Source: Octopus sinensis
Taxonomy: Eukaryota
Assembly: GCF_006345805.1 (NCBI RefSeq)
Contig: NC_043006.1
Span: 29,760,001-29,824,000, forward strand
Reading direction: 5' to 3'
Length of the DNA: 64,000 nt
Shown here: in pieces, positions 8,451 to 32,159 of the stretch
How the letters are laid out: each line of letters begins with the position of its first letter
How positions within the stretch are numbered: the first letter of the stretch is position 1
Program-made: the position numbers and the translations under genes
Notes under the pieces: model-generated
Told to the model about the DNA's origin: nothing
Seen by the model: only the letters and a program-made list of their open reading frames with translations
Databases searched by the model: none

Positions 8451-8659
8451 ATTCACCAAGCTGATTCTATGGAATTCTCTTGGATTAAAAGCTTTCTGTC
8501 CAACTGCAGCATCACATTGTTGAGCTGTTGACTCTGATATACGTGGAAACTTGGTTATATCACCTCCACTTTTTATTATACATTTTTGATTCACTTGTTG
8601 TCACCTTCAACAATTCTACTGTTATGCAACCAATAGTTACCATTGCTGCTGGCAACAAA

Positions 8660-9484: not shown

Positions 9485-9919
9485 ATATATATATATATGA
9501 ATGTGAGTATATGTGGTTATGTATGTGTATTTAGCCTCCAAAGGCTCTGAAATGGAGCATCCTCAAGAAAAATGAATTTCATTTTCGAAATCTGCATCTC
9601 AAAGAGAAGAATAAACTGGCATTGCAAATGGAGATGGTACAGAACCATTTGTAACTTATAATAAAAGAGGTGTTAAAGAATTTTCTTTGTCTTCTTCTTT
9701 TCATTAGATTATTTACTCTTTGCCAAACCCATAAAACTTGGATTTTCTATATCTGAAGCATTTCGGCTTTAGCTTGGATCCCGACTATGTTGATAGCTCA
9801 GTATTTGGGTCAAGTGCTTCTCTGGAAATACCCCAACTTCACACCCAACCTGACCTTAGCCACTTGCTCTATACCAAATATACACTTCATATATTTGAAC
9901 TTATCTAAAAATATATATA

Positions 9920-10160
9920 TATATTCTTTTATTTGTTTCAGTCATGTTGACTGTGGCCATGCTGGAGCATCACCTTTAGTTGAACACATCGACCCCAGGA
10001 CTTATTCTTCATAAGCCTAGTACTTATTCTATCAGTCTCTTAGCTGAACTGCTAAGTTACGGGGACGTAAACACACCAACGCCAGTTGTAAGCGATGGTG
10101 AGTGACACACACACACACACACATACGACAGGCTTCTTTCAGTCTCCGTCTACCGAATCC
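9920..10160 (-). mobile_element. SINE family A, 3' two-thirds
   Basis: Reverse complement of family A body (TTTGTTTCAGTCAT..GCTGGAGC..GACCCCAGGACTTATTC). Confidence 0.85.
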
Positions 10161-10194
10161 TGAAGCTATACAGATACATATATTAATATATACC

Positions 10195-10385
10195 TGCAAA
10201 ACGTAACCACATGTGAATCATTGGCGATTTTCTTCCTCCGTCTTCCTTTCTATTGGACTCTCCTCTGTTTCTGAAGAAGAGCATTGCCCGAAACATTAAA
10301 CCATCTTTTTCTCCTTCCCTGAATGTCTGCTAACTTTACATGTGTCCTCACATTGTTGTTTTTTTGTGTTTGTTCTTTTTTGGGG
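10195..10385 (+). mobile_element. Short Penelope-like terminal repeat with hammerhead-like core
   Basis: CTGAAGA-A-GAGC-ATT-GCCC-GAAAC at 10271-10294. Confidence 0.45.
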
Positions 10386-10401
10386 ATTTACTATATATTA
10401 A

Positions 10402-10451
<50 letters not shown>

Positions 10452-10489
10452 CATTAACAGGATTAAGGCAATGAGCAAGTAGAGTTGTT

Positions 10490-10660
10490 ACTTCTCCTAG
10501 AAAAATGTTTGAGGCAGCATTTCGTCTGCTTTTATGTTCTGAGTCCAAATTCCACCACAGTCAACTTTGCCTTTCATCCTTTTGGGATCAATAAATGAGT
10601 ACCAGTTGAGTGCTGGGGTGGATGTAATCGACTTACACCACTCCCCAAAACTACTGAAAC
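10490..10660 (+). mobile_element. SINE family B, degenerate
   Basis: TTCTGAGTCCAAATTCCACC..TCAACTTTGCCTTTCATCCTTTTGGGATCAATAAATGAGTACCAG. Confidence 0.75.
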
Positions 10661-10814
10661 TAATGTAAATTAGCAAGATGTCTCTACCTCTTTCTGGTTG
10701 TCCATCATCACGAGTGAGACAACTCTGATCTTAAACTATTTATCTCCCTTGGTTATTCAATCCTCAGTATATTTACAGTGTATACTTCTGACTACACTAA
10801 GTAAAAAGGAATAA

Positions 10815-11150
10815 AGACCCCTTTCAGTCACAAATGATCATGGGATTGCACTTAGTAAGTTCCCCTCCTAGGAACAAATATGGGCAAAGTTGTCTGTGTT
10901 AGATCAGCAGTTGCCTATGCATATCGGCATCCCCTCTCCAAGCCACTGATGTTATCCCAAGGGAAATGGCAAAGGCCATGATACAGCTTGGCACCAGTGA
11001 TGTTGCAACTCATTTCAACAGCTGAGTTAACTGGAGCAACATGAAATAAAGTGTCTTGCTCAAGAATGCAATACAAAGCCCGGTCCAAGAACTGAACTCA
11101 AGACCTCATGATTATAAGCTCGACACTCTCACCACTGAGCCATGCATCTC
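10815..11150 (-). mobile_element. tRNA-derived SINE family C (TCTTGAGCAAGACACTTT type)
   Basis: Reverse complement colinear with 16572-16895. Confidence 0.8.
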
Positions 11151-11336
11151 AGCATATCATATGGTCACATGACAGATAATGATGGCTACATACTTTTGCT
11201 ATTGTTGGTAGTAACAGATAATGTGAGACTTGCAACCAATTGATAAACAATATTGCTGTTATTACTAACATACTAACATATATTCATTGTAAATATACAA
11301 ATGATAATTTTTTTTTTTCATATCATTGTCATCATG

Positions 11337-11367
<31 letters not shown>

Positions 11368-11369
11368 TA

Positions 11370-11404
<35 letters not shown>

Positions 11405-11489
11405 ATGTATGTATGTATGTATGTATGTATGTATACACAGGCACACTCGCCCTATTATCACGGTTGGTAACTTCAATGTGTCATTTTGG

Positions 11490-13440
11490 GTAAGAGTCCA
11501 GTGGACTTGATGGTATACTTATGACTCTGGTTTCAGAAATGAGGAGAGAACAAAGAAGAAGGCTGCTAGAAGTCCATAATGCAAATGATTTGCTGACCTG
11601 CAACACTAACTGCAGCAAACCAGCCAGCCAGCCACTGTTAATCTAGTTAATCTAGTAGGTACACAAGCCAGATTGGCCATATTTTCATCAGAAACAAGGA
11701 CAGGCAGATGCTTGTAAATGCAAAGTCCTTCCATGGTGCAGAATGTACAACTCAACAGAGTTTAGTGTTAACTTCAGACTTAGGTTTAGAAGGATTCAGA
11801 GATACAAGCCAGTCTGGAAAAGGAGAATATGGAAGCTTAATGATTCATTAAACAATCAGAAGTTTAGAGAAGTTCTAACTGAAGTATTTGATGAGAAGGA
11901 AGAGAGAGAGAGAGATAACAAAGAGAAATACTGGAAGTTCTTATGAGACAACCTATTAAGGGGTACAATATGAAGTTGGGTCAAAATTCCAGCCAGACCA
12001 AGGTTGACACAGTGGTGGAACAGTGAGGTGGACAGGGCCCTCAAAGTGAACGGACAGGTTTAGCAAGTGTTGGAAAATTAAAGTGGTATATCAGGTGGCC
12101 AGGAAGGGAAGCTAATGAATGTGTTTATCTAGTAAGGAGTAGGAGCAGGAAGGAAGTGGTTTGCCAATGTCTTACAGCATGAAAATCAGAAGCATGAGAT
12201 GTTCTGGATCGCAAGACAGTCTATAAGTGAGAATCAAGATGTTGTAGGAGAGAAGTGAATGTGTGGAAGGATAAAGGTACACTTGCACTTTTAGTGATTC
12301 TGGAAAGAAAGAGGCATGAAAGTGCTACAATGAAAGGCAATTAAATATGAAGAAAGGAAAGTCTTCCCAATGTGAACCCAATGGAAGGAGAAGCTATCCT
12401 AGTTAGCAGCAGTATGATAGTTAAGGTAATTAAGGATATGAAGAATGGGAAAGTCCCTGGTCCATCAAGAATCATCAGTGAAATGCTTAAAATATCCGGC
12501 AGAGTAGCACACAGCCTAGTCCCCTGTATAGTTAATCAGGTTGTACAGGAAAGTGTCATACCCAATGAGTGGTATAGCAGCATTATAGTCAATTGTTACA
12601 AGGGTAAAAGAGATGCCAGGAGAGAAGTAATTAGAGAGGTATCAAATTGCAGGACCAGGTGGAAGTTACAGAGAGAGTTATAACCCTCTTAATGAAGAAC
12701 AGAATTAGACAAGATGTGATGCAGCTTTGCTTCATGTGAGAGGGATGCAGAGTGCTATTGATGTCATCTTCTTAGTCTACAGGAGAAGTATTTAGCTAGA
12801 AGTAAGCCATTGTACTTGGCATTTGTTGATCTGGAGAAAGCTCTTAATGCAGTCCTTTGTTCTGTTATCTGGTTGTCTCTGAAGAAGCTAGAAGAAGACA
12901 AACGGCTTGTGAATGCCATTCAAGCCATGTACAGGGTGCAGTCAGTGAGGTGAGAGTTAGCCATGAGTACAGTGATTAATTTAGGGTATAGGTAGAAGTT
13001 CACCAGGGCTTGGTTCTCAGTCCACTCCTATTCATCATTGTCCTTCAGACTATAACAGGAATTTAAGACCAGCTGCTCTTGAGAACTATTATATGTCAAT
13101 TACCTCATTCTCATAGCAGGATCTATAAAAGAATTAGAATAGAAATTCTTGGTGTGAAAGCAAAACTTGGAATCGAAGGGCCTTAAAACTAACTTAGGAA
13201 AGACCTATGTTCTAATAAGCAGGAAAACAGAGAGGACGCTATCCCTTCAGGTAAATGACACTGCTCAATATGTAGGAAAGATGTAGGCAGAAATTTCATA
13301 GAGTACCCAGTGCAAGCTACGGACACACAAGGGGTGTAGTAGAATCACAGGAAGATTAAGAGAAAGTAGTGTTTGTATTTGGAAGACATGTGCAGAAGCA
13401 ATAAACATTAGGGACACACAAGAAACAGATTATCAGTTCA
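11490..13440 (+). mobile_element. RTE-clade LINE ORF2 remnant (end of endonuclease region, RT, PHD-like finger)
   Basis: KMKNGKVPGPSRIISEMLK, LAFVDLEKA, HQG.VLSPLLFII motifs; Cys cluster ~13255-13395 homologous to 3155-3297; many stops. Confidence 0.9.
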
Positions 13441-14030
13441 TGCCAAAAAGTTATGATCCAATTTAGGTGCTGAGCAAACTCAAACTCTCAGGCGGTGCTA
13501 ACAAGCTCTGATTATTCTCAGATGAGAAGAACTTTGTCCAAAATCAAAAAGTGAACAGGAAGAATGACAGATGGTTCCGTGCCAGATACAGTAAAGTCCT
13601 CACTGTTATACACATCAAGTTCCCAACAGTGAGGGCCATATCATAGCGCCTCATGTTTTCATGCAAGATCTTAGGGTCAATACAGCAGCCTACATTGAGA
13701 TAATGAAAATGGTTGTCAAGCCCTGGATTCAGATGGTCATTTGGAGGAGGCTGTACATCTTCTGCTCCCTCTTACACAACTTGAATGACACATGAGGGTA
13801 TGGCAGAAAATTAGCCTCCTAGCTCTCCTGGTTTAAAACCCCTCGACTACTACATGTTGGGTACCATTGAGAAGGAGACCAACAAGCATAGCTACAATAT
13901 CAAGGACTTGTTGATGGCTGCTATTGGGGACATTATGGCCAACATGAATATATATCACTTAACCAATGCATTCAGTCATTTCAGAAGCCATATCCAGGCA
14001 ATAATCAAGGTTGAAAACATTTTTTTAAAA
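13440..14030 (+). mobile_element. Tc1/mariner-superfamily transposase remnant
   Basis: FSDEKNF..Q..NRKNDRW (~13515), VVKPWI, SSPGLKPLDYY (~13822; SPDLNPLDY-like), then ORF 13854-14078. Confidence 0.8.
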
Positions 14031-14484
14031 ATCACATTTTGCTGCTACATGTATTTAAGAATGTATCAAAGTCTATGAAAATAAATAGTTTTTTTTCTAA
14101 TATCTTTATTAATGCCACTACTTATTTTTGAAAGTCAGGTACTTTTTCTGACAGTCTCTTTTGCTGAATGGCTAAGTTACAGGAATGTAAACAAACCAAC
14201 AGCAGTTATCAAGTAGTAATGGGAGATAAATACAAAGGCACACACACACATTTGGCTTAGGTATGGTGGGACTAATAAACTGGTGTAGAGCTAATGAAGC
14301 TCATAAGATAATTGTTTATTTGTTTGTCATTCTCCTTATTACATTCTGTACTTGACTAACACTTCCTCCTGAAGCATAAGTTTACTGAGTTCTACACCAG
14401 GTTAATTAATGAAGTTCATTAGATAATCATTTGTTCCTTTATCATCTCATTTTCTTATACACACACACACACACACACACACAC

Positions 14485-14632
14485 AAGCTTCTTTCAATTT
14501 CTGTCAACAAAATCCACTCACAAAGGTTTGGTTAGTGCAATGCTATAATAGAAGACACTTGCCCAAGGAGCCACACAGTGGGGCTGAACCCAGAACCATG
14601 TGGTTGTGAAGCAAACGTCTTACAACATAACC
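14485..14632 (-). mobile_element. SINE family A, 5' part
   Basis: GAAGACACTTGCCCAAGG..CAGTGGGGCTGAACCCAGAACCATGTGG. Confidence 0.75.
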
Positions 14633-14704
14633 ATACATATATATATATATACGTACGTACATACATACATACATACATACAAAGAAAAAAGGAAGCACTC
14701 TATC

Positions 14705-15022
14705 AGTTACGACAACAAATGTCCCAACTGATACGATCAACAGAACAGCTTGGTTGTGAGATTAATGTGCAAATGGCTGAGCACTCCACAGACATGCATA
14801 TGTACCCCTCTTACATATTTCTCAGGGGGATTCAGCATGATACAGAGTGTTAAAAAGCTGGCCCCTTAAAATACAGGTACTACACATTTTTGCCAGCTGA
14901 GTGAACTGGAGCACCATGAAATAAAGTGTCTTGCTCAAGGACACAATCTGCCACCAGGAATTGAACTTGCGACCCTGCGATTACAAGCCAAATACCCTAA
15001 CCACTAAGCCACACGCCTTCAC
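14705..15022 (-). mobile_element. SINE family C variant
   Basis: AAAGTGTCTTGCTCAAGGACACA, GGGATTCAGC; colinear with 59546-59841. Confidence 0.8.
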
Positions 15023-15439
15023 ATGCATGTATGTATGTATGCATCTGTCTTGTACCTCGTCCCAAAACACTTCACATCATCTGTACTGCTGCCTATCACC
15101 TCCCTAACCCACACCTACTTCCTCCACCTTCCCATCCAACTGATATTCATAACTGACCACACCCCTACACATCTTCACTCTTCATTGCTTTATCCACCTC
15201 TCACTTCCCTTCAACACCCACAAACATACCTACCCATTCACCCTCTCCAATCCCTTGGACCACTTCTCTTATGCCCACCTTATTGTCATCTGAGGGTATG
15301 CCCTAACACTTCTTCACCCTCATCTCCCTTTTACCAGCTAGAGTACCAATGTATCTCCTTCTGAAAGACACCTGTTCCTGTCACCTCCATATTTTAGCCT
15401 CTCAACACCTGACAAAAAGGCACCTTCCTCAATAGTGCA

Positions 15440-15665
15440 TCTCTCAGTTGAAGGGTCCTGTCTTGCAAAAGACTTGGTGAATTCACTAGTGTTGGTACCC
15501 AAGGAAAAAAAAACAAAAAAGAAAACTAGTACACTTTGAAAAGTGGTTGGTGTTAGGAAAGTTATCCAGCCTTTGAAATCATTTCAAAGCAGACACTGGA
15601 GCTTGGTCTTCTGACCGATCACTACCTGTCAAACCATCCAACCCATGCCACCATGGAAAATGCAT
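15440..15665 (+). mobile_element. RTE 3' UTR fragment
   Basis: GTGGTTGGTGTTAGGAAAG..ATCCAGCC..CCAACCCATGCCACCATGG. Confidence 0.75.
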
Positions 15666-16269
15666 ATTTTATTACTGTTTTACTATATTTGTCACAGTGG
15701 ATTTTGCCTTCGCATGTGGTTGCCAATGGATACTTGACACTGATGAAGCTCAAAGAGGCAAAAATGCACATTTAGCAATACCACTATCACTGCTACAAGA
15801 TTTTTCATCTACTGCTGACATATTTCTCTGCATTATTTAACCTTTCAGTATTTAAACCGGCCATATCCGTCCAAAATATTCAAATTGCTTTATATTCAAA
15901 CTGGTCAGGGCCTGCCTCTCACACCTATCCTACACTGTTAGTGTAAAAAAAAACTATATCACCAAAATTTTTAAATTACAAGATAATGCATGCTTAATTC
16001 AAAACAAAGTGAATAAACAGGCATTACTTTTGACAGAGAAATCTGAACACTAAAGGATGAAGACAGTATGTTCATAAGATTATTTCCAGACAAATACTGC
16101 AGGTAATTGGCCTTTCAAAGATATATCTGCTTTAAGTAGGATACACAGATTGATATATATATATCTTTTATTTGTTTCAGTCATTAGACTGTGGCCATGC
16201 TGGAGCACCACCATGAAGAATTTCAGTCTAACAAATTGCCCCCAATACTTATTTTTTGAAGTGAGATAT

Positions 16270-16271
16270 AT

Positions 16272-16303
<32 letters not shown>

Positions 16304-16389
16304 CATTCATATATATGCATATATAAATAAATAAATGCAGTTATATACATATGTATATACATTCATATATATATATAAATGTGTGTATG

Positions 16390-16423
<34 letters not shown>

Positions 16424-16447
16424 ATATATACACACATAAATAATACA

Positions 16448-16483
<36 letters not shown>

Positions 16484-16500
16484 TATATAAAATTATACAT
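16270..16500. repeat. (TA)n compound microsatellite
   Basis: Direct inspection. Confidence 0.9.
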
Positions 16501-16571
16501 ATAAGCATAATGCATGTTAAATGATGAAGATGATATACATACATAAAAATATACATACACATATATACAAG

Positions 16572-16895
16572 TGAAGGCACATGGCTCAGTGGTTAGAGCA
16601 TCGAGCTCACAATCATGAGGTAGTGAGTTCAATTTCTGAACCAGGCTGTGTATTATGTTCTTGAGCAAGACACTTTATTTCACATTGCTTCAGTTCACTC
16701 AGCTGTAGAAATGAGTTGCAACATCACTGGTGCCAAGCTGTATCGACCCTTTTGCCTTTCCCTTGGATAACATCAGTGGTGTGGAGAGGGGAGGCTGGTA
16801 TGCATGGGCATCTGCTGGTCTTCCATAAACAACCTTGTCTGGACTTGTGCCTCAGAGGGGAACTTTCTAGGCGCAATTCCTAAGGGGGTCTTTAC
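16572..16895 (+). mobile_element. SINE family C, full length
   Basis: tRNA-like head TGGCTCAGTGG..GAGTTCAATT, then GTTCTTGAGCAAGACACTTTATTTCAC. Confidence 0.85.
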
Positions 16896-16944
16896 TTTTA
16901 CATGTAAACATATACAGACATACATGTGCATGTATGTATATATA

Positions 16945-17055
16945 TCATCATCATCATCATTTAACATCCGCTTTCCATGCTAGCATGGGTTGGACGATTT
17001 GACTGAGGTCTGATCTGGCAGAGTTTCTACAGCTAGATGCCCTTCATAACGCCAA
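16945..17055 (-). mobile_element. RTE 3'-end fragment (the only minus-strand copy found)
   Basis: (CAT)n-TTAACATCCGCTTTCCATGCTAGCATGGGTTGGACG next to (TA)n. Confidence 0.85.
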
Positions 17056-17059
17056 CCAT

Positions 17060-17283
17060 ATGGACAGATAGGTGCCTCACCTTGTTTGTTGTTACATTTC
17101 AGCTGATGTATTCTCCAGCCTTCATCAGGTGTTCTGGTGGAATTTCGAACCCAACCCTATTCTCATTCCTAAGGTATTCTTTATTGCTGCTGTAGCTTTT
17201 TTCTGTTGATAGTATTTCCCAAGATTGAACTGAGAATCCAAGGGTCAGTAGCCCACACTCTTATCCACTACACTATATGCCCG
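17060..17283 (-). mobile_element. tRNA-headed SINE with Penelope-like, hammerhead-like 3' part
   Basis: Minus strand: A-box-like TAGTGTAGTGG and B-box-like AGTTCAATC in 17283-17215; CTGATGA-A-GGCTG-(10 nt)-CAGCT-GAAAT at 17128-17096. Confidence 0.6.
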
Positions 17284-17504
17284 ATGTGAATGTTTTGGGC
17301 TTATAAACCTAATATTTTATCTTTTCTTAATACTGGTTCCCATATTACACTCATATCTGCACTAGGTCTGCTTAGGAGTTTATTGTGTCCTAACATATGT
17401 GCAGAGACTTGGGAAATAATATCAACAGAAAAAAAATGACATGTATATTATGAAAATGATGTACATAGTTCCTCATCTCAAAAATATAGAATAGTATATA
17501 TGTA

Positions 17505-17890
17505 TATATAAAGGGGCCTCACAAAGGCAAAGTGGCCAAGTTCCTTTCAAGCGTTGGGCCTCAAAGTAGCTGAGTTCCTTTCAAGAATTGGGCCTCACAG
17601 AGGCATTGACTGAGATCTTTGGCATTATGTCGTGCTTGAGAAGAAGACCCATCAAACAGCAAAATTGCAGTCATGACAGATACTGGTGTCACGTAAATGG
17701 GAACCAAGCCAGTGGCACGTAAAAGCACCCATTACACTCTTGAGGTGATTGGTGTTAGGAAGGGCATCCAGCCATAGAAAACCATGCCAAATCAAACTGG
17801 AGTCTGGTGCAGCCTTCCAGTTTACCAGCCCTGGTCAAACCGTCCAAACCATGCCAGCATAGACAACAGACGTTTAATGATGATGATGAT
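17505..17890 (+). mobile_element. RTE 3' UTR fragment
   Basis: Tandem GTTCCTTTCAAG..TTGGGCCTCA units, then GGTGTTAGGAAGGGCATCCAGCC..ATGATGATGAT and (TA)n. Confidence 0.85.
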
Positions 17891-17951
17891 GATATATATA
17901 TATTATATATATATATATATATAATATATATATATATATACATACACGTAC

Positions 17952-18039
17952 GGATGGGTCTTCATGAATACAGCAATGCACCAGATAAATGACTAAGGCG
18001 AGATGTGTGGCACATTGCTGGACTCATGAAGACCTGTCC
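17952..18039. mobile_element. Small inverted-repeat element (MITE-like)
   Basis: GGATGGGTCTTCATGA (17952-17967) versus TCATGAAGACCTGTCC (18024-18039), 14/16 complementary. Confidence 0.5.
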
Positions 18040-18049
18040 ACCACAGAAG

Positions 18050-18288
18050 AATTGATACTAGTGCTGGTGCTATGTGAAAAGCACTCATGCTGGGGCCACA
18101 TTGATAGCACTGGTGCTGGTGCCACATAAAAAACACCCTGCACACTCTGTGGAGGGGTTGACATTAGGAAGGACATCCAGATATGGAAACCATGTCAGAA
18201 CAGACAATGGAGCTTTATGCAGTTCCTGGCCTTACCACCTGCGGTCAAACCTTCCACCCCATACAGACGTTAAATGATGATGATGATG
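18050..18288 (+). mobile_element. RTE 3' UTR fragment
   Basis: TTAGGAAGGACATCCAG..CCCATACAGACGTTAAATGATGATGATGAT. Confidence 0.75.
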
Positions 18289-18312
18289 TATACATATACA
18301 TACATGTATGTC

Positions 18313-18353
<41 letters not shown>

Positions 18354-18489
18354 AATGAGGTCACAGAAGTGTGATGAAAGAACTCTGGCCGAAATACAAT
18401 TAATATAAAATGAAGCTGAAGCAAATGAACACCAAATATATAGTGCATGTGTTTTTATTGACTAACCTGGCAACATGACCATCCCCAAA

Positions 18490-18760
<271 letters not shown>

Positions 18761-18846
18761 AGGTACACTGCATAAGTGCAATAATTGGTCACAAGTTAGG
18801 TTCAAAGTTCACAGCTGAGGCTGGAGCTCAGGATCCGTAGTAGGCT

Positions 18847-19290
18847 TGGACAATGAAACCAAGGCAAGACAAGTATTTCAGGTCATTTAGAATATTTAAT
18901 TAGAGTAAGGTGAATCAAAAAACAGAGATGTAGAATTGATTAATGTCTTAAAACTGTTTCTGGGATATCCCACATGATGGGTCGACATCTCCATACAGTG
19001 AGTATTCCATCATCAAAGACAAGGTGTGTATGCAGGAAAGTTCCAGACAGAAAATTCCCAGTAGATAGAAGAATAAAACAGTAGTCTGTGTCTGGATCTT
19101 TCCTGCAAACACTCCTTGTCTCAGATGACGGAATACCCAGTGTATGGAGGTGCTGACCCCTCACCCGGGATGTCCCAGAAACAGAGGTAAGACATTAATC
19201 AATTCTACATCTCTGTGTTTTGATTCACCTTACTCTAATTAAATATTTTAAATGACAGAGATACTCATCTTGCCTTGGTTTTGTTGTCCA
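18847..19290. repeat. Fold-back element, ~200-bp inverted arms, 39-nt loop
   Basis: Arm 18847-19049 (TGGACAATGAAACCAAGGCAAG..TTCCAGACA) is the reverse complement of 19089-19290 with scattered mismatches. Confidence 0.9.
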
Positions 19291-19409
19291 TTTATATATA
19301 GATATATACGTCCATACATACATATATACTTATATATACATACACACACACATAGATAGATAGATAGATAGACACACACACACACATATACATACATACA
19401 AATATATAT

Positions 19410-19524
19410 ATATGGCCTGCTTGCTTAGCCAGCAGGGTGGCGTCATTTGAAGGCTAAAAGAATGTGAAGTGCATTGTGACCAGCGATGTGTAGCAACATC
19501 TGATAGCCTGGTCAGTCACGTGAT

Positions 19525-19533
<9 letters not shown>
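19410..19533 (+). mobile_element. 3' end of a second LINE-type family with CACGTGAT terminal repeats
   Basis: ..GATAGCCTGGTCAGTCACGTGATCACGTGAT then (TA)n; family assignment from memory. Confidence 0.45.
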
Positions 19534-19583
<50 letters not shown>

Positions 19584-19689
19584 TGTATGGTGGAAGTCAG
19601 CTCATGCTTGAATAAGACAACTTACACTTTCTAAGGATTTCGAGCATAAAGTTGACCCCCACTTTCCTCTGGGTTTGTTGTCTTGCCAG

Positions 19690-19805
19690 CTGCATGGCGA
19701 TCTTAACTGTGCTGGTGTCATGTATAAAGTACCCAGCTCACTCTGTAAAGTGGTTGGCATTAGTAAGGGCATCCAGCCATAGAAACCTTGCCAAAATAGA
19801 CAACT
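19690..19805 (+). mobile_element. RTE 3' UTR fragment
   Basis: CACTCTGTAAAGTGGTTGGCATTAGTAAGGGCATCCAGCCATAGAAACC. Confidence 0.75.
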
Positions 19806-20134
19806 GCTGTATGATAGTCCTTGGACACATCGGTTCCTCTCAAATTCCAAGCGATATATTCTAATATGGAACATGGACCTCTCTCTCTCTCTCTCTCTTT
19901 CTATACATGTGTGTGCGCGCACACGTGTGCATGCGTGTGTGAGTGTGTGCGTGTGCTTTATACCCTTTCTACTTTAACAAAGTCACGGAAAAGTACGTGT
20001 GTGTCTAACCCATGCCATCATGGAACACAGACGTTATATGATGTGTATGCGTGTGTGTATATTAATACCCTTTCTCCTTTAACAAAGTCACAGAAAAGAT
20101 GAACACATATACATATATATACGTACGTGTATAT

Positions 20135-20178
<44 letters not shown>

Positions 20179-21336
20179 CGTGTAAGGTGTAGAGCGAAAA
20201 GTATAAAGTGCTTCTTCTACTTCCAAGAACATGTTTCGAAAATTATTTGCTGTCTATTTGTCATTTCCCTGTGGACTTATGCAACGTTAATTGATATCTA
20301 TATGATATGAATAATATTAATAACATCCTTTTAAGAAAATTAATACAAAGAAGAATGAAATATATATTCTTCGTTGGTGCTAGAATATAAATTTTGAAAT
20401 ATTATTAAATATTACCAAATATATTTGCTACACAACAAAGTGGAATGAAAACGCTAATCGATTCTTTGGGACATGTTTTTAAATCTGAGCACATGTTAAT
20501 TTATCTTCACCGATTCCAGCATCAGTTTTAGTTCACAACTCCAGGGAAGTTGATACGAAACTTTTTACATGTTCATTAATTTCTTTCCAATTCTCAATTT
20601 TATTCACTTTTTCTTTTTTCTTTTTTTTTTTTAAGAAATAGACAAAAAAAAAATAGTTGGAATTCGTGTTATAATATTCCAAGCGTGGCTAATAAATAGA
20701 AGAAAGAACTTGGCCGTTTCTGCTTTCGGAACGGAACTCATTACAACCGACTGAACGGAAGCTAAAAAAAAAAACTCTGAACAAGAAACACAGAATGAAA
20801 ATGGTCCTAGAAACAGCAGACCAAATAGAAAGAAAGAATTATAAACACACGGAAAATGAGATCTGTTTTTCTTTCGAAATAAAGAATGACAAACGAAAAT
20901 CTAAATTATTCAACGAACTTTCGTAAAACCGCTCTCTCTCTCTCTCTCGACCACTTATATAAGTCTAAATTGATAAAATAATTATTCATGTTACTTCGCT
21001 TCTTCTGTTATTTATTCTGGTTAATTTCGTGTAAAAAAAAATATTTCCCATTATAACGCACAAGTTAGTATCTATTTCATTAAGATTAAATAGACTGTAA
21101 ATTCATGAAGCTACTAACAGCCAATATGTATAATTCGTTTTCTTCAACAGAAATGATGTATCCATCATATTACGAAGCCAACACTATAGAAACTGCTAGT
21201 GAAATCTTTTGCTCGACAAGCAACAAGCGAGTTTGAAAACTTTTTATTTGTAATCAGCGAACCATGAAGACACGCACGCACATACATACATATGTGCGTG
21301 TGCATACAGATAGAAAGACAAACACAGAGAGGTATA

Positions 21337-21388
<52 letters not shown>

Positions 21389-21723
21389 GAGAAAAGGAAG
21401 AAAAATAGGAAAATTGACGTACGGACGTCATTTACTCAAAGACATTCAAATTCCTGACATATACATTTATATACATACATATATGCATGCATATATTTAT
21501 ATACATATTTTATTGTCTGGGGAGAGTCGTTCTGTTTTAATTAACACGCTCACCGGTTCGATTTCCACTCATTTACTTAGTTTTCCTAAAATTTTCGTTG
21601 CTTCTTGCAACCTCTTCAACAGTCGATGATATACATACATAGATATAGATATAAATATATTACATGTATACATGTATTCATTTATGTTCATATATATTTA
21701 TAGAAGTGTGTGTGTGTGTGTGT

Positions 21724-21762
<39 letters not shown>

Positions 21763-21959
21763 ATATATATATATATATATATAAAGTACGATACATACAT
21801 ACATACATACATACATACATACATACATAATTTCTCAATGGCATAATGATACTAAAAACCTGGTGCTTGAACTCAATAATATTCTTATGCTTCAGAATAT
21901 CATCGAGTACAGAGCATAATGTGGAAAAAAAAATTTGACAAAGGAACAGGAAATTATGC

Positions 21960-22130
21960 AATGAACTTCGTAAGCTTATATCTTTATTTGCTGAGTTTCC
22001 ATAGACTCAGAACTGAATGCTTGTGCATCAGAAGCTCTGACGAAGCTATAAGGTGATGTACAAACACACAGCTCTGAATCCACGGCATCTTATAGCAGAA
22101 ACAGGTGTAAGCGAAGTAAATTCACTAAGT
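21960..22130 (+). ncRNA. Hammerhead-ribozyme-like motif with extended stem II (probably Penelope-like terminal repeat)
   Basis: CTGACGA (22037-22043), GCTATAAGGTG (22045-22055) pairing with CATCTTATAGC (22086-22096), GAAAC (22098-22102); stems I and III not unambiguously closed. Confidence 0.4.
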
Positions 22131-22199
22131 AATTTCCTGTTCCCTTGTCAATTATTTCGTTTCACATTATGCTCTTTACTCGACAAATGCTTTATCCTG

Positions 22200-22449
22200 A
22201 AGCTTTATATATATATATATATATATATATACATACACACACGTGCATATATACATTATATACATACATACATATATATAAATATATTACATACATTCAT
22301 GTATGTGCATATATATATGTATGTATATGATATATTTATATATATACACATATATATGTGTGTGTATATATATGTATGTATAAGATATATGTATATGATA
22401 TATATTTATATATGTGTGTGTGTATATATATATATGTATGATAGATATT

Positions 22450-22517
<68 letters not shown>

Positions 22518-22730
22518 ATATATATGTATGTATATGATATATATTTATATATACATATATGTGTATATATATATGTATGTATATGATATATATTTATATA
22601 TGCATATATATGTGTATATATATATATATATATTAGAAGGTTTATATATATATATATATATATTATATAATATATATATATATATTATATATATACATGA
22701 ATGTAATGTGTAGTGTACAGAAATTGTATA
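22200..22730. repeat. Long (TA)/(TATG)/(TG) compound microsatellite
   Basis: Direct inspection; source of spurious IYIY ORFs. Confidence 0.9.
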
Positions 22731-22964
22731 TATAGAAACACACGTACACACACAATATTTCATTTATAAAAGATGTCATAAAAGCAAAAATATATTCCAA
22801 GATAGGCTTTTACAACTGCTACAGTTCTTATAGCCATTTTTTTGTTTTTGTGAGATTACTTTAATCTTAATTAAGAAGAACCTAGACCCTCCGAGCAGTA
22901 ATCCGGTGTTTATCTATTCCAAGCTTACTAAAACTTTTTCTCTACACACATATAGGAAAAGATC

Positions 22965-22965
22965 C

Positions 22966-23000
<35 letters not shown>

Positions 23001-23135
23001 ATATTATATATATAATATATATATATATATATAGATAGATAGATGGATGGATGGATGGAGGATGGATGGATGATGGATGGATGGATGGATGGATGGATGG
23101 ATGGATGGATGGATGGATGGATGGATGGATGGATG

Positions 23136-23215
<80 letters not shown>
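22965..23215. repeat. (TA)n-(GGAT)n-(GATA)n compound microsatellite
   Basis: Direct inspection. Confidence 0.95.
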
Positions 23216-24123
23216 CTCAAGCGCGCCTACATACACGTATACACACACACACACAAAACTTTATAATAAACCTCAAGAGTTTCCCTCTCTTATCAGCATC
23301 ATTAATATTTTGACAGACAATTTGGTGACAAAGTTTGAACCTAATCGAAATGGGGAGAATTCCCCTTTATTTCTTAGTCGAAATGTATTTCATCAAAGTG
23401 ATTTTCTTCCCAACCGACAGTGTTATTTATTATTAACCAGACTAACTAAATAAAATGTAATATTACAAACAATCTGATGGAGATCGCCTTGGGACGGTGA
23501 AGTGGCGATCGGAACTTTTGTTAGCATTAGCAACGAATAATGATAATAAAAATTGAATGTATTTCACTTTGATAAGACTGGTGTAGTAGTGCGCAAAAGA
23601 TTGGAGAGAGATATGCTCTATTTGTACAATAAAAATGGTGATGATAGTGACGAATAAAGATGAAGTTACAATTGTAATTCTTGTATCTCAAGTGTTTTGA
23701 CATTAGAGGATTAGTAAAGTAAATGAAAGTTGGAGGGTCAATAAGTTAGATGTGTGGAAACTAACACATGTTGCTTTATAAAGTTTTGATCGTCAGGACG
23801 GGATGGTAGATTGTGGATTCATCAATTCTCCGTGAAACATTTTTCTTTTTTCTTTTTCTTTTTTTGTGTGAAGAAACGGAGAATAATTTATACTTCGAAA
23901 CACTTTTAAATTTGTTGTTAAAATTGAGTTCTTTGTTACGGATGTGTAAATAGAGAAGGATTTTAGTAACGATGATGTTTTGTGAGTCTAATGATTTTTT
24001 ACATAATGTGAGAGAAATCAACAAGAATAAAGGCACCGTCGTCAACAACATCGCCATCACTTCGACAATGAGAATGACGACGACGACGACGATGAAGGAT
24101 GATGAGAAGATGAAGCTGCTTAC

Positions 24124-24184
24124 CTGGGATGCAGTCAAGTGTTATTATTACAACCAGAAAAACGCTCCACTGGTAACTTTTCAT
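24124..24184 (-). CDS. Putative first coding exon of a secreted or membrane protein (signal peptide)
   Basis: GGAGAC-ATG at 24184; MKSYQWSVFLVVIITLDCIP+G (basic n-region, hydrophobic h-region, small c-region); CCAG|GTAAGC donor at 24123, phase 1; unique non-repeat sequence; downstream exon not found. Confidence 0.6.
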
Positions 24185-24214
24185 GTCTCCACTTTGTAGA
24201 GGAAAGTAATAAAC

Positions 24215-24345
24215 TTAGAATGAGTAAAATCTTCGGCCGACCATGACTAGCCTGCCCAGCCGAAACAGTGAAACACAACAAACAATTCTTCTTTCAATAC
24301 AGAAAAAGCCCAATTTTTTCATCTCCGAATCCAAAACTGACTTCC
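24215..24345 (-). promoter_or_regulatory. Candidate core promoter / 5' UTR: Inr-like TCAGTT and a 9-codon uORF
   Basis: TCAGTT on minus at 24340-24335; uORF ATG 24244 to TAA 24215 (MVGRRFYSF*); purine-rich GA tracts further upstream on minus (24350-24930). Confidence 0.3.
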
Positions 24346-24607
24346 TTTGCCCTCCCCTTCCTCTTACTCTCACTTTTACCATTCTATCAGTTTTCTTCTT
24401 TTCTTCCTTTTACATTCCCCTCTCTCTTTCCTATTTCTATCTTTCACCAATCTCCTCTCTCTTTATAATATACGCTGCCTCTTCCTCTTATTTGGTTTTG
24501 TTTTCTCCTTAAATTATTCTTCTCTTTCTCCTCCTCCCGCTCTTCTTTGAGCTTTTTTCTTCTTTTTGCCCATTCCACTTTCTCTCTTCTCTCTCTCTCC
24601 CCATCTG

Positions 24608-24645
<38 letters not shown>

Positions 24646-25327
24646 ACACGTTCTTTTTCGCTATCTCTCCACCTCGTTTTTTTCCCTCTAATTCTTTAAA
24701 ATTGACCAGAGATGATCGAATTGTCTATGAAATTCATCGACCTCTCTCCCAGGTCATTTTCTGTTTTATCTAAAAAAATATTTCTTTTACTCACAGCCAT
24801 TTCTCTCTCTGTCTCTCTCTCTCTCTCACACACACTAACTCACTCACTCTCTTCCCCTTCTCTCTCTTCCTTTCTCTCTCTCACACGCACTAACTCACTC
24901 TCTCTCTCTCTCTCTCTCTCACTCACTTTACCATTTCTGTTTGTGTCACTCATAAATAAAGTTCACTTACAACTTTTTACCATTTTTTAAAAACTATTCT
25001 TTACGCATGTACATGCTCAATAGACAGACGTTGAGATACAATCATGCATATTGTTATATCAATAAATGTCGCGCTTTATATCACCACCACCACCATCATC
25101 ATTATTAAACGGCAGAAGTTACAAAATGACTCAAAGTTCGATAGTTTCGTTTATGGCACAATAAATTCCATAAATTCATAAACGAAACTCCCGACCCGTG
25201 ATTCAATTTGTAATTTCTGTCGAATATATAATATTCATATCGAATTCTATTATTTGTTCAACCAAACTTCTGTGTGTGTTTATATGTGTATGTATGTGTA
25301 TATACATATATGTATGCATATATTCCT

Positions 25328-25658
25328 TTATTCTTTTACTTGTTTCAGTCATTTGACTGCGGCCTTTATTCGAGCAAATCGACTGCAGGACTTATTCTTT
25401 GGTAGCCTAGAACTTATTCTATCAGTCGTTTTTGCCGAACCAGCAGGAGACAAACACAGACACACACACACACACACACACACATTTATATTTACGACGG
25501 GCTTCTTTCAGTTTCCATCTACCAAATCCATTCACAAGGCTTTGGTCGGCCCGAGGCTATTGTAGAAGACACTCGCCCTAGGTGCCACGCAGTAGGACTG
25601 AACCCGGGACCATGTGTTTGGTTAGCAAGCTACTTACCACACAGCCACTCCTGCGCCC
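25328..25658 (-). mobile_element. SINE family A, near full length
   Basis: Ends CACAGCCACTCCTGCGCCC; reverse complement of 1535-1957. Confidence 0.9.
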
Positions 25659-25972
25659 ATATATATATAATATTCGTCAAAAATTTTATTGTGCGTGCGA
25701 GTGTGTATGTGTGTGTGTTTGTGTGCGTGAGTGTACGAGTTTAGTTAGAGATTGCGTGTATTTCTATATATGTTTATGAATGTTTGTTACATTTTCGTCT
25801 CTCCCCGTATTTTTGACTTGTTATCTCATCGAAGTCCCCACGGCCAATTAATCTGCTTCACTTTTATATTTTATTTTCGTTATTTTCCGATATTTCACTT
25901 GTCAAGAAATCTTCTCTTCAAATCTTCTCACTATTCCTTATTTTCTTTCTTAAAAATACACGCTTTCACATA

Positions 25973-25974
<2 letters not shown>

Positions 25975-26005
<31 letters not shown>

Positions 26006-26277
26006 CACACACATACATACATACATACACACATACATACATACACACACATACATACACACATACATACACACATACATACATACACACACATACATAC
26101 ACACACATACATACGTACATACACACACATACATACATACATACATACATACATACATACATACATACATACATACATACATACATTCATACACACACAC
26201 ACACACACATACATACATACATACATACATACATACATACATACATACATACATACATACATACATACATACATACG
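25975..26277. repeat. (CA)n/(TACA)n microsatellite
   Basis: Direct inspection. Confidence 0.95.
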
Positions 26278-26299
26278 TGAGAGCAACAACATCTTCAGA

Positions 26300-27187
26300 A
26301 TTGGAGAAGAACCACTGTGTAGGTACTCTGAGACTGCAACTGTCTCATGCAACCCAAAGACAGACTGCACTGTCCTACCTAAACAGATGCTTGGAAGAGA
26401 AGCAGGCATCATAGCAGCAAAATGCAAAGCATGGGTACATATCCCGTAAGTGAGAGGGCAACAATAGCACTGACAGGAAGAGTAGCCCCTACTGGACCTT
26501 ACAATACATCCCACCTAGAAGACATTTCTTCACTATCCACAAACAGGAGATAGCTATTAAGTACTTGATAAACAACAAGGAGAAATATACCACCAAACCT
26601 CCACGTTGTGATAAAAAAAATGTCGGCTCTGCTATACCAATGTGGAAGATATCACCCACATCCTCAGCAGCTGCCCCAAAATGTCTACGAGATACTATCT
26701 GTCCTTGAGGCATGATATAGTTGCAAAGACTATTTACAATGCTATCCGAAGGAAGGACTGCCGAGATATATAACATCAAAAGCATATCAGGACCAGCAGG
26801 TATTCACACCTTTAAAAACAAGTATTCCTTGTTGAACACCCCAATAAAAACACCAATTTGATGCAAATATAACAGACCTGATATTCTTCTGCAGGACAGG
26901 GAACAAAAGTCATGCAGTGTTGTAGAAGCCAGCTGCCCAACGGATGTGAATGTACAATCGAAAGTCCAGGAAAAGAGTATGTTTATGGTGAATTAATGCG
27001 GAACTTACATCACTTGTACCCTGACTACGGATTCTCGTTTGTACCTATCATCGGTGGGTGTATTGGGTTATGTAAATCACATATTTGCACAAAAACCTAG
27101 AAATACTCGAATTCGTGGAGAAAGAGCAAAAGAAACTGACGTGGATTCTCCAAATCCAATCTATTAGTGGCACAGTGAAGATGTGCA
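26300..27187 (+). mobile_element. Non-LTR retrotransposon 3' region with CCHC finger and restriction-like endonuclease (R4/Dong/Hero-like)
   Basis: CRLCYTNVEDITHILSSCPKM..LRHDIVAK (zinc knuckle), YNRPDI..VVEASCP (PD-(D/E)xK type), ELMRNL..YP.Y.F.FVPII. Confidence 0.8.
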
Positions 27188-27231
27188 TCTATTCACATAA
27201 GAATCTCACATGGAGAATTTTTAGAACGTCT

Positions 27232-28020
27232 TGCAGATCTTCACTGTGTCACTAACAGATTGGATTTGGAGGATCCACGTCAGTTTCTTTCGCTCTTTTT
27301 CCATGAATTCACGTATTTTTAGTTTTCTGTGCAAAGTTGTAGGTGCATAACATAATACACATAATACAAACGAGAATCCATAGTCAGGGTACAAGTGATG
27401 TAAGTTCCGCATTAATTCACCATAAATATACTCTTTTCCGGGACTTTGAGGGTATGCATGGACATTTCAACCAACACACCAACTCAATCACATATTTACA
27501 AACAGCGAGAACTCTCTTAACTCAAAAAGTGTTGTCGCTTTGTTAGCGACCGGCTTGAACCCTCCTGAGAAGAACTTAAATAAAACCCAAAGAAAAATCA
27601 TACACAAACATGAATATATTTCTTGCTTACATACACGAACCAACGATGAACTTTGTACGTGGTCGCTCGAAGATAATGTAGTACTGTATAGTGTGTTTGA
27701 AAAGAAAAAGGTCGGGATGTCGGGATGGAGTTAGTTGGAATGCCTTTTCAGTGTTGGTCTGCTTGATTAGAGCTGACTTGACGAGTGAAACCTTCTTTTC
27801 GCTCCTCTTTCCTTTCATTGACTCTAAGGTACATCTTAAAGACCTGTTGCTCAATTGCAGGTTCCATTGAAGATCACAAGTGTATGGCACCATCACACAC
27901 ATATTTCTTGATTAGTATCAATGTTGTTGGTATATGACATATTCATATCCTCTGTTTAAATATGTGACCGGCAAATTCGATAACCAAAGAGACATTTGAA
28001 AATGCTTGTCTAGTCTCGGA
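27232..28020 (-). mobile_element. Second copy of the RLE LINE, tail-to-tail with the first
   Basis: 27232-27447 is a close inverted copy of 26961-27187; ORF 27221-27412 MRNLHHLYPDYGFSFV..QIQSVSDTVKICKTF; SLWLSN..GYEYVIYQQ near 27990-27930. Confidence 0.6.
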
Positions 28021-29256
28021 TGTCATTAATTAATCAATCAATCCAAAAGCAGAAAGCAGAATACGGTAGCAGTGGCTGCCGGTTGGCTCCTCTTTTCTTC
28101 TCTGCCTTGGCGAAAGTTCTTCGCCCTCTCTCTTGTAATCTGCACGAAGTAAATTCGTATGAGAGATCATTTCAGCTCTATTTTTCCTCCATAATCATAA
28201 ACTTACTTTCTTCATAATGCACAATTTGTTGTTATTTTCTCAAAATTTTAAAAATCAACTTCTATTTCTCAAATATCAGTCTTGAAGCAATCTCTGTATC
28301 TCTAAGCATGCTTGTTTTGAGGTCTTTTGCGCTCCATCAATTCCTCATAAAAAGCTATTTTAGGAAACTGCCATTATTTAGCCGTAATATTTGATCATTT
28401 AACTCAGGCTACTTTTATGAGACGAGTTTTAATGCCCAAGCACTGCTGTAACAGAAATCTTACTGCAGACAGTTTCGTTCAGATGCAAATATTGATGGTT
28501 CATAGCAAGGATCACCAGGACCAGGAGAAAACATCAGTTTTGCTTTAAAGAAATATATCGAGAGCAAACAGCTGAAAAATCTATCTTTTATTTCTGGAAG
28601 ATCAAATCTCCTAATCAGATTTCTGAGTATTATAGCAAATGTTTTGCCCTTTACCTTTAAGAGCTGTAAGTAAATTTAAAACAAAAAAAAAAAGCCTGCT
28701 GCTTTCACGAACACAGTATTAGGTTTTGCATCTGAAGGTGACACTGACCACACTAATATGTGTTTCCATATTCTTTTTATTACCATAAGTACAACAATTA
28801 TTTAAATAAACCTAATTACAAAACTGACCGACAGAGTTGTGTTCTGTTCGTGAGTTCAACATCCCAACTTTTTATAACTTGTAGTCACTCTTCTAGAACC
28901 TTCGGCAGAACTAGTAGGCGGGAAATTTCCCAAAACTTACTTTCAAGTCCGTTGCTTATTTGGTCAAGCGATGTTCAAGAAAGCGGTAGTGCCTTTTATA
29001 GCAAGACAGTTAAATTCTCATAGCCGGTCTTTGCTTTTTATGATTCTAAACTGGGTTATCTAAGCGAGATGGTATAAAATTCTGTAGAAGTTTCTTTCCA
29101 AGAGTCTTTTCATGGGTATGTTATAAAACAAACGTGACGAATATAAATAAATAGATAGACAGACAGACAGACAGATGAACGGACGGACGGACAGACAGAC
29201 AGACAGATAAATAGATATAGATATGTATGTGTGTAAGACAGCGTGTGTGTGCGCGC

Positions 29257-29291
<35 letters not shown>

Positions 29292-29295
<4 letters not shown>

Positions 29296-29577
29296 GGCGT
29301 GTGACCCAGTGGTTCGGGTATTGCACTCACGATCGCGAAATCGTAGTTTCAGTTCCTTGGCCGGGTGGTGCGCTGTGTTCTTGAGCAAAACACTTCATCA
29401 CACGATGCTCTGCGATCACCTCTACACCTGATGCATAGCACAGCATACACCTGTTAATAAAGGGAGTCAGCTAATGTACGGCACATGCATTTGATCACCA
29501 GAAACAAATCATTTTGTGCAGGTCGTTCGGCAAAAAGCTGAACACTCATACGTTGTCTTCGACGGGGAGAGATCGAC
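29292..29577 (+). mobile_element. tRNA-derived SINE, family C-related variant
   Basis: GTGACCCAGTGG head, GTGTTCTTGAGCAAAACACTT core. Confidence 0.7.
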
Positions 29578-30229
29578 ATTACATATATATATATATATAT
29601 CATCGTGATGGTTGTTCCCTATATTTTCAGTCGTTCACTCGATCGAACGATAAAACTGAACCATGAACCATGAACGCACCCAAATGCTTATCTGAAACAG
29701 CTGTATGCCTATAAATAAATAAATAAATAATAAATAAATAAATAAATAAATGAATTTATAAATAAATGTGCATAACCCATTCTTTCTCTCTAATTTGTGT
29801 GTGTGCGTGTATGTGTAGGCCGATGCAACTATGTATCTATATGTGTGTGTATGCAATTTTGTGTGTGTGTATATATACACACATATGTATAAATATACAT
29901 ACATACATAGAGAGGGAGGGGAGAAAGAGAGAGAAAAGAGTTATGAGAACACAGAAGCAAATACAATCAATAATTTAAAATCGACCAAATACATACCAAG
30001 TGTTATAGCATAAAGACAATGGTATTCTACATAAGATAGGTCATTTGTACTTGCCACACCAATTCACTTTTCTGCCACTTTTAATAGAAAAACACCTTTT
30101 TATGAACAATGACTTTGTGCGTTGAATGTGTCATTATGTAATTTTAATATTGTGCGTAGAAATGTAGGTTCGCAAGGCATTGAACTAATGTAAGTTTGTT
30201 TTTTTCGTTTTTTGTAATTCTTTCAGTTT

Positions 30230-32150: not shown

Positions 32151-32159
32151 AGCAGTTTT

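What the first reader, a model, noticed from the sequence alone, without database searches (positions are those of the whole stretch)
19300..20700. Sharp CpG-density boundary splits the window into two domains
Seen: hand counts of CpG per 600 bp give 3 (1-600) and 1 (11521-12120, inside a relatively GC-rich RTE) on the left, versus 23 (20701-21300) and 17 (57601-58200) on the right; old repeats on the left show CG-to-TG/CA decay. Established: invertebrate 5mC is concentrated in gene bodies and erodes CpG by deamination. Inference: 1-~19.5 kb is a long-methylated gene body and the right part is unmethylated promoter/intergenic DNA. The switch sits ~4 kb inside the putative intron 1 of the minus-strand gene starting at 24184, independent support for that gene model. 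A convergent neighbouring gene could also explain it.
Basis: partly seen in the sequence, partly recalled or inferred. Interest (0 to 1): 0.7.

Follow-up and report, generated by a model that had tools for sequence, protein, structure and literature searches.

The report
Sharp CpG-depletion boundary, likely methylation footprint
The left 19.8 kb of this invertebrate (probably cephalopod) window has lost about 70% of its CpG sites to TpG/CpA while the right 44 kb has not, with a step under about 0.6 kb wide. This is the ordinary footprint of a long-methylated stretch next to unmethylated DNA, but I could not find the gene it is supposed to belong to.

Summary
All four hand counts are exact. CpG o/e is 0.26 for 1-19830 and 0.83 for 19831-64000, at nearly equal G+C (37.1% vs 35.8%). 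There is one change point, at 19831 (support interval 19420-19924). Its likelihood-ratio statistic (LRT) is 268-283, against a maximum of 13 in permutations. The step is under about 0.6 kb wide, and neither side has further structure.

The contrast survives masking: 0.22 vs 0.81 in unique sequence, 0.30 vs 1.01 in repeats. The left lacks 392 CpG and has 401 extra TpG+CpA, split evenly between strands. Copies of the same repeat families keep 34% of ancestral CpGs on the left and 59% on the right (p = 1.4e-4), and the left copies are not older.

This is the classic footprint of long-term germline 5mC over a whole domain, as known from invertebrate mosaic methylomes, including octopus.

The "gene body" part is inference only. 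I found no exon, Pfam domain or homologue on either strand. The strand and the gene are unresolved, so the step is not independent support for that gene model. It is a clean but ordinary example of a known phenomenon.

The parts
1..19830 (.). CpG-depleted domain. It runs off the left edge of the window, so it is at least 19.8 kb long. CpG o/e is 0.26 overall, 0.22 in unique sequence and 0.30 in repeats. TpG and CpA o/e are 1.32 and 1.30.
19420..19924 (.). Support interval of the single change point (ML 19831-19916). The transition is step-like, under about 0.6 kb wide. The interval holds microsatellites and decayed repeat fragments. No CTCF-like motif or other discrete element was recognised.
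19831..64000 (.). CpG-replete domain. CpG o/e is 0.83 overall, 0.81 in unique sequence and 1.01 in repeats. No further significant substructure. No coding evidence apart from decayed transposon fragments.
24122..24184 (-). It is present as sequence but has no database support.
1532..1957 (+). SINE-A copy in the left domain: 8 CG and 12 TG/CA at ancestral CpG columns, 4.2% non-CpG divergence. Other left copies lie at 6603-7023(+), 9922-10160(-) and 14487-14606(-).
59890..60330 (+). SINE-A copy in the right domain: 17 CG and 8 TG/CA. Other right copies lie at 25362-25674(-), 45719-45796(-) and 63341-63591(-). These serve as the internal control.
2815..3291 (+). Decayed non-LTR retrotransposon reverse-transcriptase fragment. 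The RVT_1 match is weak (E 0.0024, below Pfam's cut-off). The RTE clade was not verified.
30380..30949 (-). Decayed LTR-retrotransposon integrase fragment in the right domain. The rve match has E 7.7e-4, below Pfam's cut-off.

Best explanation
Positions 1-19830, and DNA beyond the left edge, have been heavily CpG-methylated in the germline for a long time. 5-methylcytosine deaminates to thymine, so CpG has been converted to TpG/CpA across the whole domain, in unique sequence and resident transposon copies alike. The domain is now near the level seen in fully methylated genomes (o/e about 0.2-0.25). The 44 kb to the right has stayed unmethylated and keeps near-expected CpG.

By analogy with invertebrate mosaic methylomes, the methylated domain is most likely part of a constitutively transcribed unit, here long intron sequence with no exon detected. 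The step would mark one end of that unit's methylated span.

Shown: the composition step, its sharpness, the CpG-to-TpG/CpA bookkeeping, and the position-dependent decay of repeats. Inferred: that 5mC is the cause, that the domain is a transcription unit, and which strand it is on.
For: CpG o/e is 0.26 vs 0.83 at equal G+C, with GpC about 1 on both sides. There is a single change point, LRT 268-283 against a permutation maximum of 13. The profile is step-like.

The contrast persists in unique sequence (0.22 vs 0.81) and within repeats (0.30 vs 1.01). The missing 392 CpG are matched by +200 TpG and +201 CpA, symmetric between strands.

At ancestral CpG columns of four repeat families present on both sides, left copies keep 37 of 108 and right copies 87 of 148 (Fisher p = 1.4e-4). 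Left copies are not older: non-CpG divergence is 7.0% vs 9.2%.

Unique DNA on the left is more depleted than the repeats inserted into it. This argues for methylation of the whole domain rather than methylation aimed at transposons.

Against: No exon, protein homologue, Pfam domain, tRNA or Rfam RNA was found in the left domain on either strand. "Gene body" therefore rests on analogy.

The homologue searches had no positive control. Nothing matched, not even transposon ORFs, so it is unknown whether this organism's proteins are in the database.

The organism was not identified. "Cephalopod" is my recognition of the repeat and microsatellite style, not a tool result. Methylation itself cannot be read from the sequence. 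No strand asymmetry of substitutions or of base skew was detectable.
Confidence: 0.7

Rival explanations
1. A minus-strand gene starts at about 24.2 kb with a signal-peptide exon (ATG at 24184). Gene-body methylation begins 4.35 kb into its first intron and covers the rest of the window to the left.
For: ATG, a hydrophobic 21-codon ORF and a consensus donor CAG|GTAAGC are present. [quoted passage not shown] The three recognisable LINE/DNA-transposon fragments on the left are all on the + strand, i.e. antisense to such a gene. That is weak, with n = 3.
Against: The exon shares no three 5-residue words with any protein in the database. No downstream exon was found in 24 kb. A short ATG-led hydrophobic ORF followed by GT is an easy chance find in T-rich DNA. 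The step position does not discriminate between this start site and any other to the right of 19.9 kb.
Confidence: 0.15
2. A plus-strand gene lies to the left and ends near 19.8 kb. The step would then be the 3' limit of its gene-body methylation.
For: The composition data fit this equally well. In octopus, methylation of class MP2 and MP3 genes extends to and past the transcription end.
Against: No terminal coding exon or homologue was found on the plus strand of 1-24300. Published profiles describe methylation continuing downstream of the transcript end, which suggests a softer edge than the step of under 0.6 kb seen here. That last point is my inference, not a measurement.
Confidence: 0.3
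3. The left domain is methylated but is not a protein-coding gene body. It could be a long non-coding or small-RNA-precursor transcription unit, or a repeat-rich patch silenced by targeted methylation.
For: No coding signal in at least 19.8 kb. Cover by within-window interspersed repeats is 24% on the left and 11% on the right.
Against: Unique sequence is more CpG-depleted (0.22) than the repeats (0.30), which is the opposite of transposon-targeted methylation. Transposons are largely unmethylated in the one cephalopod methylome read here. Long exon-free introns are common in large invertebrate genomes (my own knowledge).
Confidence: 0.1
4. No methylation is involved. The step would reflect a join of two unrelated pieces (assembly chimera or old rearrangement), or different sequence age or composition.
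For: The support interval contains (TA)n, (CT)n and (TG)n runs, which can attract misassembly.
Against: There are no N gaps. G+C and GpC o/e are the same on both sides, and the same repeat families occur on both sides. A join would move the boundary's origin but would not explain why one side lost CpG to TpG/CpA one-for-one. Left repeat copies are not older.
Confidence: 0.04

Closest known systems
[quoted passage not shown] The reference was seen; the paper was not readable here, so its content is from my own knowledge.
   Same: Kilobase-scale CpG-poor domains abut CpG-rich domains with abrupt boundaries. CpG o/e serves as a historical record of germline methylation. Transposons carry the state of the domain they sit in rather than being targets themselves.
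   Different: There the CpG-poor domains were shown by methylation-sensitive digestion to be methylated and to coincide with annotated transcription units. Here neither the methylation nor the transcription unit could be demonstrated.
Octopus bimaculoides gene-body methylation classes MP2 and MP3 (Macchi, Edsinger and Sadler 2022, BMC Biol 20:202, PMC9476566)
   Same: The genome is sparsely methylated, with methylation confined to the bodies of a subset of genes. The TSS or first third of the gene is unmethylated, and intergenic DNA and transposons are largely unmethylated. The window's repeat and microsatellite style looks octopus-like.
   Different: Those classes are defined on bisulfite data over annotated transcripts, averaged in metaplots. 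This is a single locus read from sequence composition only. Organism identity is not verified and no transcript was identified.
Vertebrate CpG island or island shore
   Same: A local switch between CpG-depleted and CpG-preserved DNA, caused by the presence or absence of germline methylation.
   Different: The polarity and scale are reversed. Here the CpG-preserved state is the 44-kb, 36% G+C background, and the depleted state is the special domain. The right side does not meet G+C-based island criteria.

Membership tests
Germline-methylated (gene-body type) domain of a mosaic invertebrate methylome | CpG o/e strongly reduced relative to adjacent DNA of the same G+C | tested here: met
   0.26 vs 0.83 at 37.1% vs 35.8% G+C. 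One change point, LRT 268-283.
Germline-methylated (gene-body type) domain of a mosaic invertebrate methylome | CpG loss balanced by TpG/CpA gain on both strands (deamination signature) | tested here: met
   -392 CpG, +200 TpG, +201 CpA relative to the expectation from the right domain.
Germline-methylated (gene-body type) domain of a mosaic invertebrate methylome | Depletion covers the whole domain (unique DNA and inserted repeats), not only repeats | tested here: met
   Unique sequence 0.22 vs 0.81, repeats 0.30 vs 1.01. Shared repeat families keep 34% vs 59% of ancestral CpG, p = 1.4e-4, at similar age.
Germline-methylated (gene-body type) domain of a mosaic invertebrate methylome | The domain coincides with a transcription unit (exons inside, TSS or TTS near the edge) | tested here: inconclusive
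   No homologue, Pfam domain or convincing splice-flanked ORF on either strand. The searches lacked a positive control, and a long intron would give the same result.
Germline-methylated (gene-body type) domain of a mosaic invertebrate methylome | CpGs actually carry 5mC in germline cells | not testable with these tools
   Needs bisulfite, EM-seq or nanopore data.
Isochore-type or G+C-content boundary | A shift in G+C content across the boundary | tested here: not met
   37.1% vs 35.8% G+C. GpC o/e is 1.00 vs 1.02.
Vertebrate-style CpG island on the right of the step | A short (0.2-2 kb) G+C-rich segment (50% or more) with o/e of 0.6 or more in a CpG-poor background | tested here: not met
   The high-CpG state extends 44 kb at 36% G+C. 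The 1.75 kb next to the step is 26-38% G+C.
   ATG at 24184, 21 codons, CAG|GTAAGC.
   No candidate shares three 5-residue words. The pseudo-protein of left minus-strand ORFs found nothing.

The most novel reading that the evidence does not exclude
The CpG-depleted domain of at least 19.8 kb is not a protein-coding gene body. It would instead be a germline-methylated non-coding transcription unit or a chromatin domain, with an edge under 0.6 kb wide set by something other than a TSS or TTS. In a cephalopod this would be a class of methylation target not described in the published methylome.
Probability: 0.1. Interest if true: 0.45.

Novelty: new member of a known kind. Interest (0 to 1): 0.2.

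Why it matters
This is a clean single-locus example showing that CpG o/e alone can place a germline methylation boundary to within about 0.5 kb in an invertebrate genome. It also shows that transposon copies take on the CpG-decay regime of the domain they land in. Such steps can guide annotation: they flag that a constitutively transcribed unit probably begins or ends near 19.8 kb. They can also serve as priors for methylome studies. The finding does not change what is known about invertebrate methylation.

Tried and rejected
1. Protein homology with pseudo-proteins made of all non-repetitive ORFs of 38 aa or more. Left minus strand and left plus strand gave no hit at E <= 1e-3.

2. Exon 1 alone. 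The 41-aa ORF around it found no candidate.

3. Pfam on the same pseudo-proteins. The left gave 0 families. Right-domain ORFs of 55 aa or more gave only a weak rve match. Transposon-focused pseudo-proteins gave only weak RVT_1 and rve matches. The "RTE" clade assignment of the 11.5-13.4 kb element could not be verified.

4. Rfam and tRNA scans found nothing.

5. An ad hoc splice-site plus ORF exon finder gave 3 candidates in the left 24.3 kb under strict rules. Under looser rules the density matched the right domain and no candidate looked coding.

I did not pursue it by other means.

7. The look-up of encoding contigs on a 148-aa window ORF, tried to identify the source record, found nothing.

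8. A literature search for 20-24-mers of the SINE, tried to identify the organism, found nothing.

9. Strand inference from GC/AT skew and from complementary substitution asymmetry in repeat copies gave no significant signal.

10. A CTCF-like motif at the step: none there, and the window-wide count is at chance level.

11. Extra change points, such as the dips at 26-27 kb and 49-50 kb, are not significant.

Full report
**Observation**

The window is 64 kb of A+T-rich DNA (36% G+C) with no gaps. It is rich in (AT)n and (ACAT)n microsatellites and in SINE-like repeats.

In 1-kb windows, CpG o/e is 0.11-0.52 (mean 0.27) up to 19 kb and 0.31-1.26 (mean 0.84) from 20 kb on (Mann-Whitney p = 1.3e-9).

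I treated each C as a trial ("is it followed by G?") and fitted a single change point.
- The maximum-likelihood position is 19916, or 19831 with tandem repeats masked.
- The 2-lnL support interval is 19420-19924.
- The likelihood-ratio statistic (LRT) is 268-283, against a maximum of 13.3 in 200 permutations.

Recursive segmentation finds no second change point. The best residual splits have LRT 11.9 (left) and 7.8 (right). A logistic fit prefers a pure step. A width parameter of 500 bp is already worse by 3.4 log-likelihood units, so the 10-90% transition takes less than roughly 0.6 kb.

**Controls**

- G+C is 37.1% on the left and 35.8% on the right, and GpC o/e is about 1.0 on both sides. 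This is not a base-composition or isochore effect.
- After masking tandem repeats and every segment with a second copy in the window, unique DNA gives 0.22 vs 0.81. The repeated segments themselves give 0.30 vs 1.01.
- Dinucleotide bookkeeping: relative to the right domain's o/e values, the left domain lacks 392 CpG. It carries 200 extra TpG and 201 extra CpA. The replacement is almost one-for-one and strand-symmetric, which is the signature of 5mC deamination.
- Four interspersed-repeat families have copies on both sides of the step. At columns that look ancestrally CpG, left copies retain 37 of 108 and right copies 87 of 148 (Fisher p = 1.4e-4). Left copies are, if anything, younger by non-CpG divergence (7.0% vs 9.2%).

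So CpG decay depends on where a copy landed, not on what it is or how old it is. Unique DNA on the left is more depleted than the repeats inserted into it. The process acts on the domain as a whole rather than on transposons.

**What is at the boundary**

The support interval contains only microsatellites ((TA)n, (CT)n, interrupted (TG)n) and decayed repeat fragments. There is no CTCF-like motif there, and the window-wide count of such motifs is at chance level. A 444-bp palindromic element lies about 0.5 kb to the left, at 18847-19290. I recognised no discrete sequence element that would define the step.

**Search for the gene**

- I joined the non-repetitive ORFs of 38 aa or more from 1-24300 into pseudo-proteins, one per strand. 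Neither found any protein at E <= 1e-3 among about 5.8 billion, and neither matched any Pfam family.
- The putative first exon exists as sequence: ATG at 24184 on the minus strand, MKSYQWSVFLVVIITLDCIPG, then CAG|GTAAGC. The 41-aa ORF around it shares no three 5-residue words with any database protein.
- A simple acceptor/ORF/donor scan gives 3 candidates in the left 24.3 kb under strict rules. Under looser rules the density is the same as on the right, and none of the candidates looks like coding sequence.
- On the right, ORFs of 55 aa or more match only a weak integrase core, from a decayed LTR element at about 30.4-30.9 kb.
- tRNA and Rfam scans are empty.

These negatives carry a caveat. 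None of the homology searches returned anything at all, so there was no positive control that this organism's proteome is in the database. Exons shorter than about 30 aa, exons overlapping masked repeats, and untranslated exons would all be missed. The honest reading is that there is no evidence for exons in at least 19.8 kb. That is what a long intron, a non-coding transcription unit or intergenic DNA would all give.

I could not infer the strand. GC and AT skews are small on both sides. Complementary substitution classes in repeat copies are not significantly asymmetric (A>G 27 vs T>C 20 on the left). The three recognisable LINE/DNA-transposon fragments on the left are all on the plus strand, which would be antisense to a minus-strand gene. 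With n = 3 this is only a hint.

**Most likely mechanism**

Established knowledge, from sources I name:
- In invertebrates with mosaic methylomes, 5mC is concentrated on the bodies of constitutively transcribed genes, and CpG o/e records germline methylation history. For Ciona this is Suzuki et al. 2007 (pmid 17420183). I saw the reference but could not read the paper here, so its content is from my own knowledge.
- For Octopus bimaculoides, Macchi et al. 2022 (PMC9476566) report fewer than 10% of CpGs methylated. Methylated CpGs are enriched in introns and exons of a subset of genes, and intergenic DNA and transposons are largely unmethylated.
- The same paper describes four gene classes. MP2 has a methylated body and methylation past the transcript end, but none at the TSS or promoter. 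MP3 has an unmethylated first third of the gene.

The window fits this picture. The left domain sits at about 0.22-0.26, the level of fully methylated genomes. It includes its resident transposons. It abuts 44 kb that behaves as unmethylated, where repeats keep CpG o/e of about 1.0.

I therefore put 0.7 on [quoted passage not shown]. Within that:
- about 0.3 that it is the 3' end of a plus-strand gene;

Non-methylation explanations (misjoin, age or composition differences) get about 0.04. They do not explain the one-for-one CpG-to-TpG/CpA conversion or the position-dependent decay of repeats.

**Organism**

I could not identify it with the tools. Literature searches for SINE k-mers and a look-up of a window ORF both found nothing. 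"Cephalopod, octopus-like" is my own recognition of the repeat and microsatellite style and should be treated as a lead.

**Comparison and novelty**

This works like, and probably is, an ordinary edge of a methylated domain in a mosaic invertebrate methylome. Of the defining features, three were tested and met: CpG depletion at constant G+C, balanced TpG/CpA gain, and domain-wide scope. Coincidence with a transcription unit was tested and is inconclusive. Actual 5mC is not testable here.

It is not an isochore boundary (no G+C shift). It is not a vertebrate-style CpG island (44 kb at 36% G+C).

It is a new instance of a known kind. Its value is practical: it helps annotation and gives a tidy internal-control demonstration. 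It is not conceptually new. Interest 0.2.

The most novel reading not excluded is that the methylated domain is non-coding, or is bounded by something other than a transcript end (probability about 0.1).

Noticed in passing
window 18847-19290; 26961-27447; 43302-43523; 61134-61416 with 61509-61791: Four self-complementary (palindromic or foldback) elements with arm identities of 82-93%. The first lies about 0.5 kb left of the CpG step. The last is also related to 45796-46010. They look like MITE or foldback-type transposons.
   Followed up: partly
window 62595-63312: A minisatellite of an 82-bp A+T-rich unit, 8.7 copies, 84% matches.
   Followed up: no
window 38772-38862: A perfect 22-bp tandem repeat (GATAAAGTTAAGCACTGAGGTC), 4.1 copies, 100% identity. 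It lies inside a SINE-B-like repeat region.
   Followed up: no
window 50001-50500: The most G+C-rich patch in the window: 53% G+C, 30 CpG, o/e 0.74-0.97. The 49-50 kb stretch next to it is CpG-poorer (o/e about 0.4). Several frames are open, but there is no Pfam match and it is not a significant segment in the CpG segmentation.
   Followed up: partly
window 1-19500 vs 20000-64000: Interspersed repeats with a second copy in the window cover 24% of the left domain but 11% of the right. Tandem repeats show the opposite trend, about 10% vs 15%.
   Followed up: no
window 19880-19960 and 20137-20190: (TG)n-type microsatellites just right of the step are interrupted by CG (for example GTGCGCGCACACGTG and GTGCGTGCGTG). 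That pattern is expected where CpG is not being eroded.
   Followed up: no
window 26882-27097(+), 27224-27466(-), about 46.5 kb and about 34.0-34.3 kb: A recurring ORF motif (...YGELMRNLHHLYPDYGFSFVPIIGG... and diverged versions) suggests a further decayed transposon-encoded protein family. It has no Pfam match.
   Followed up: no
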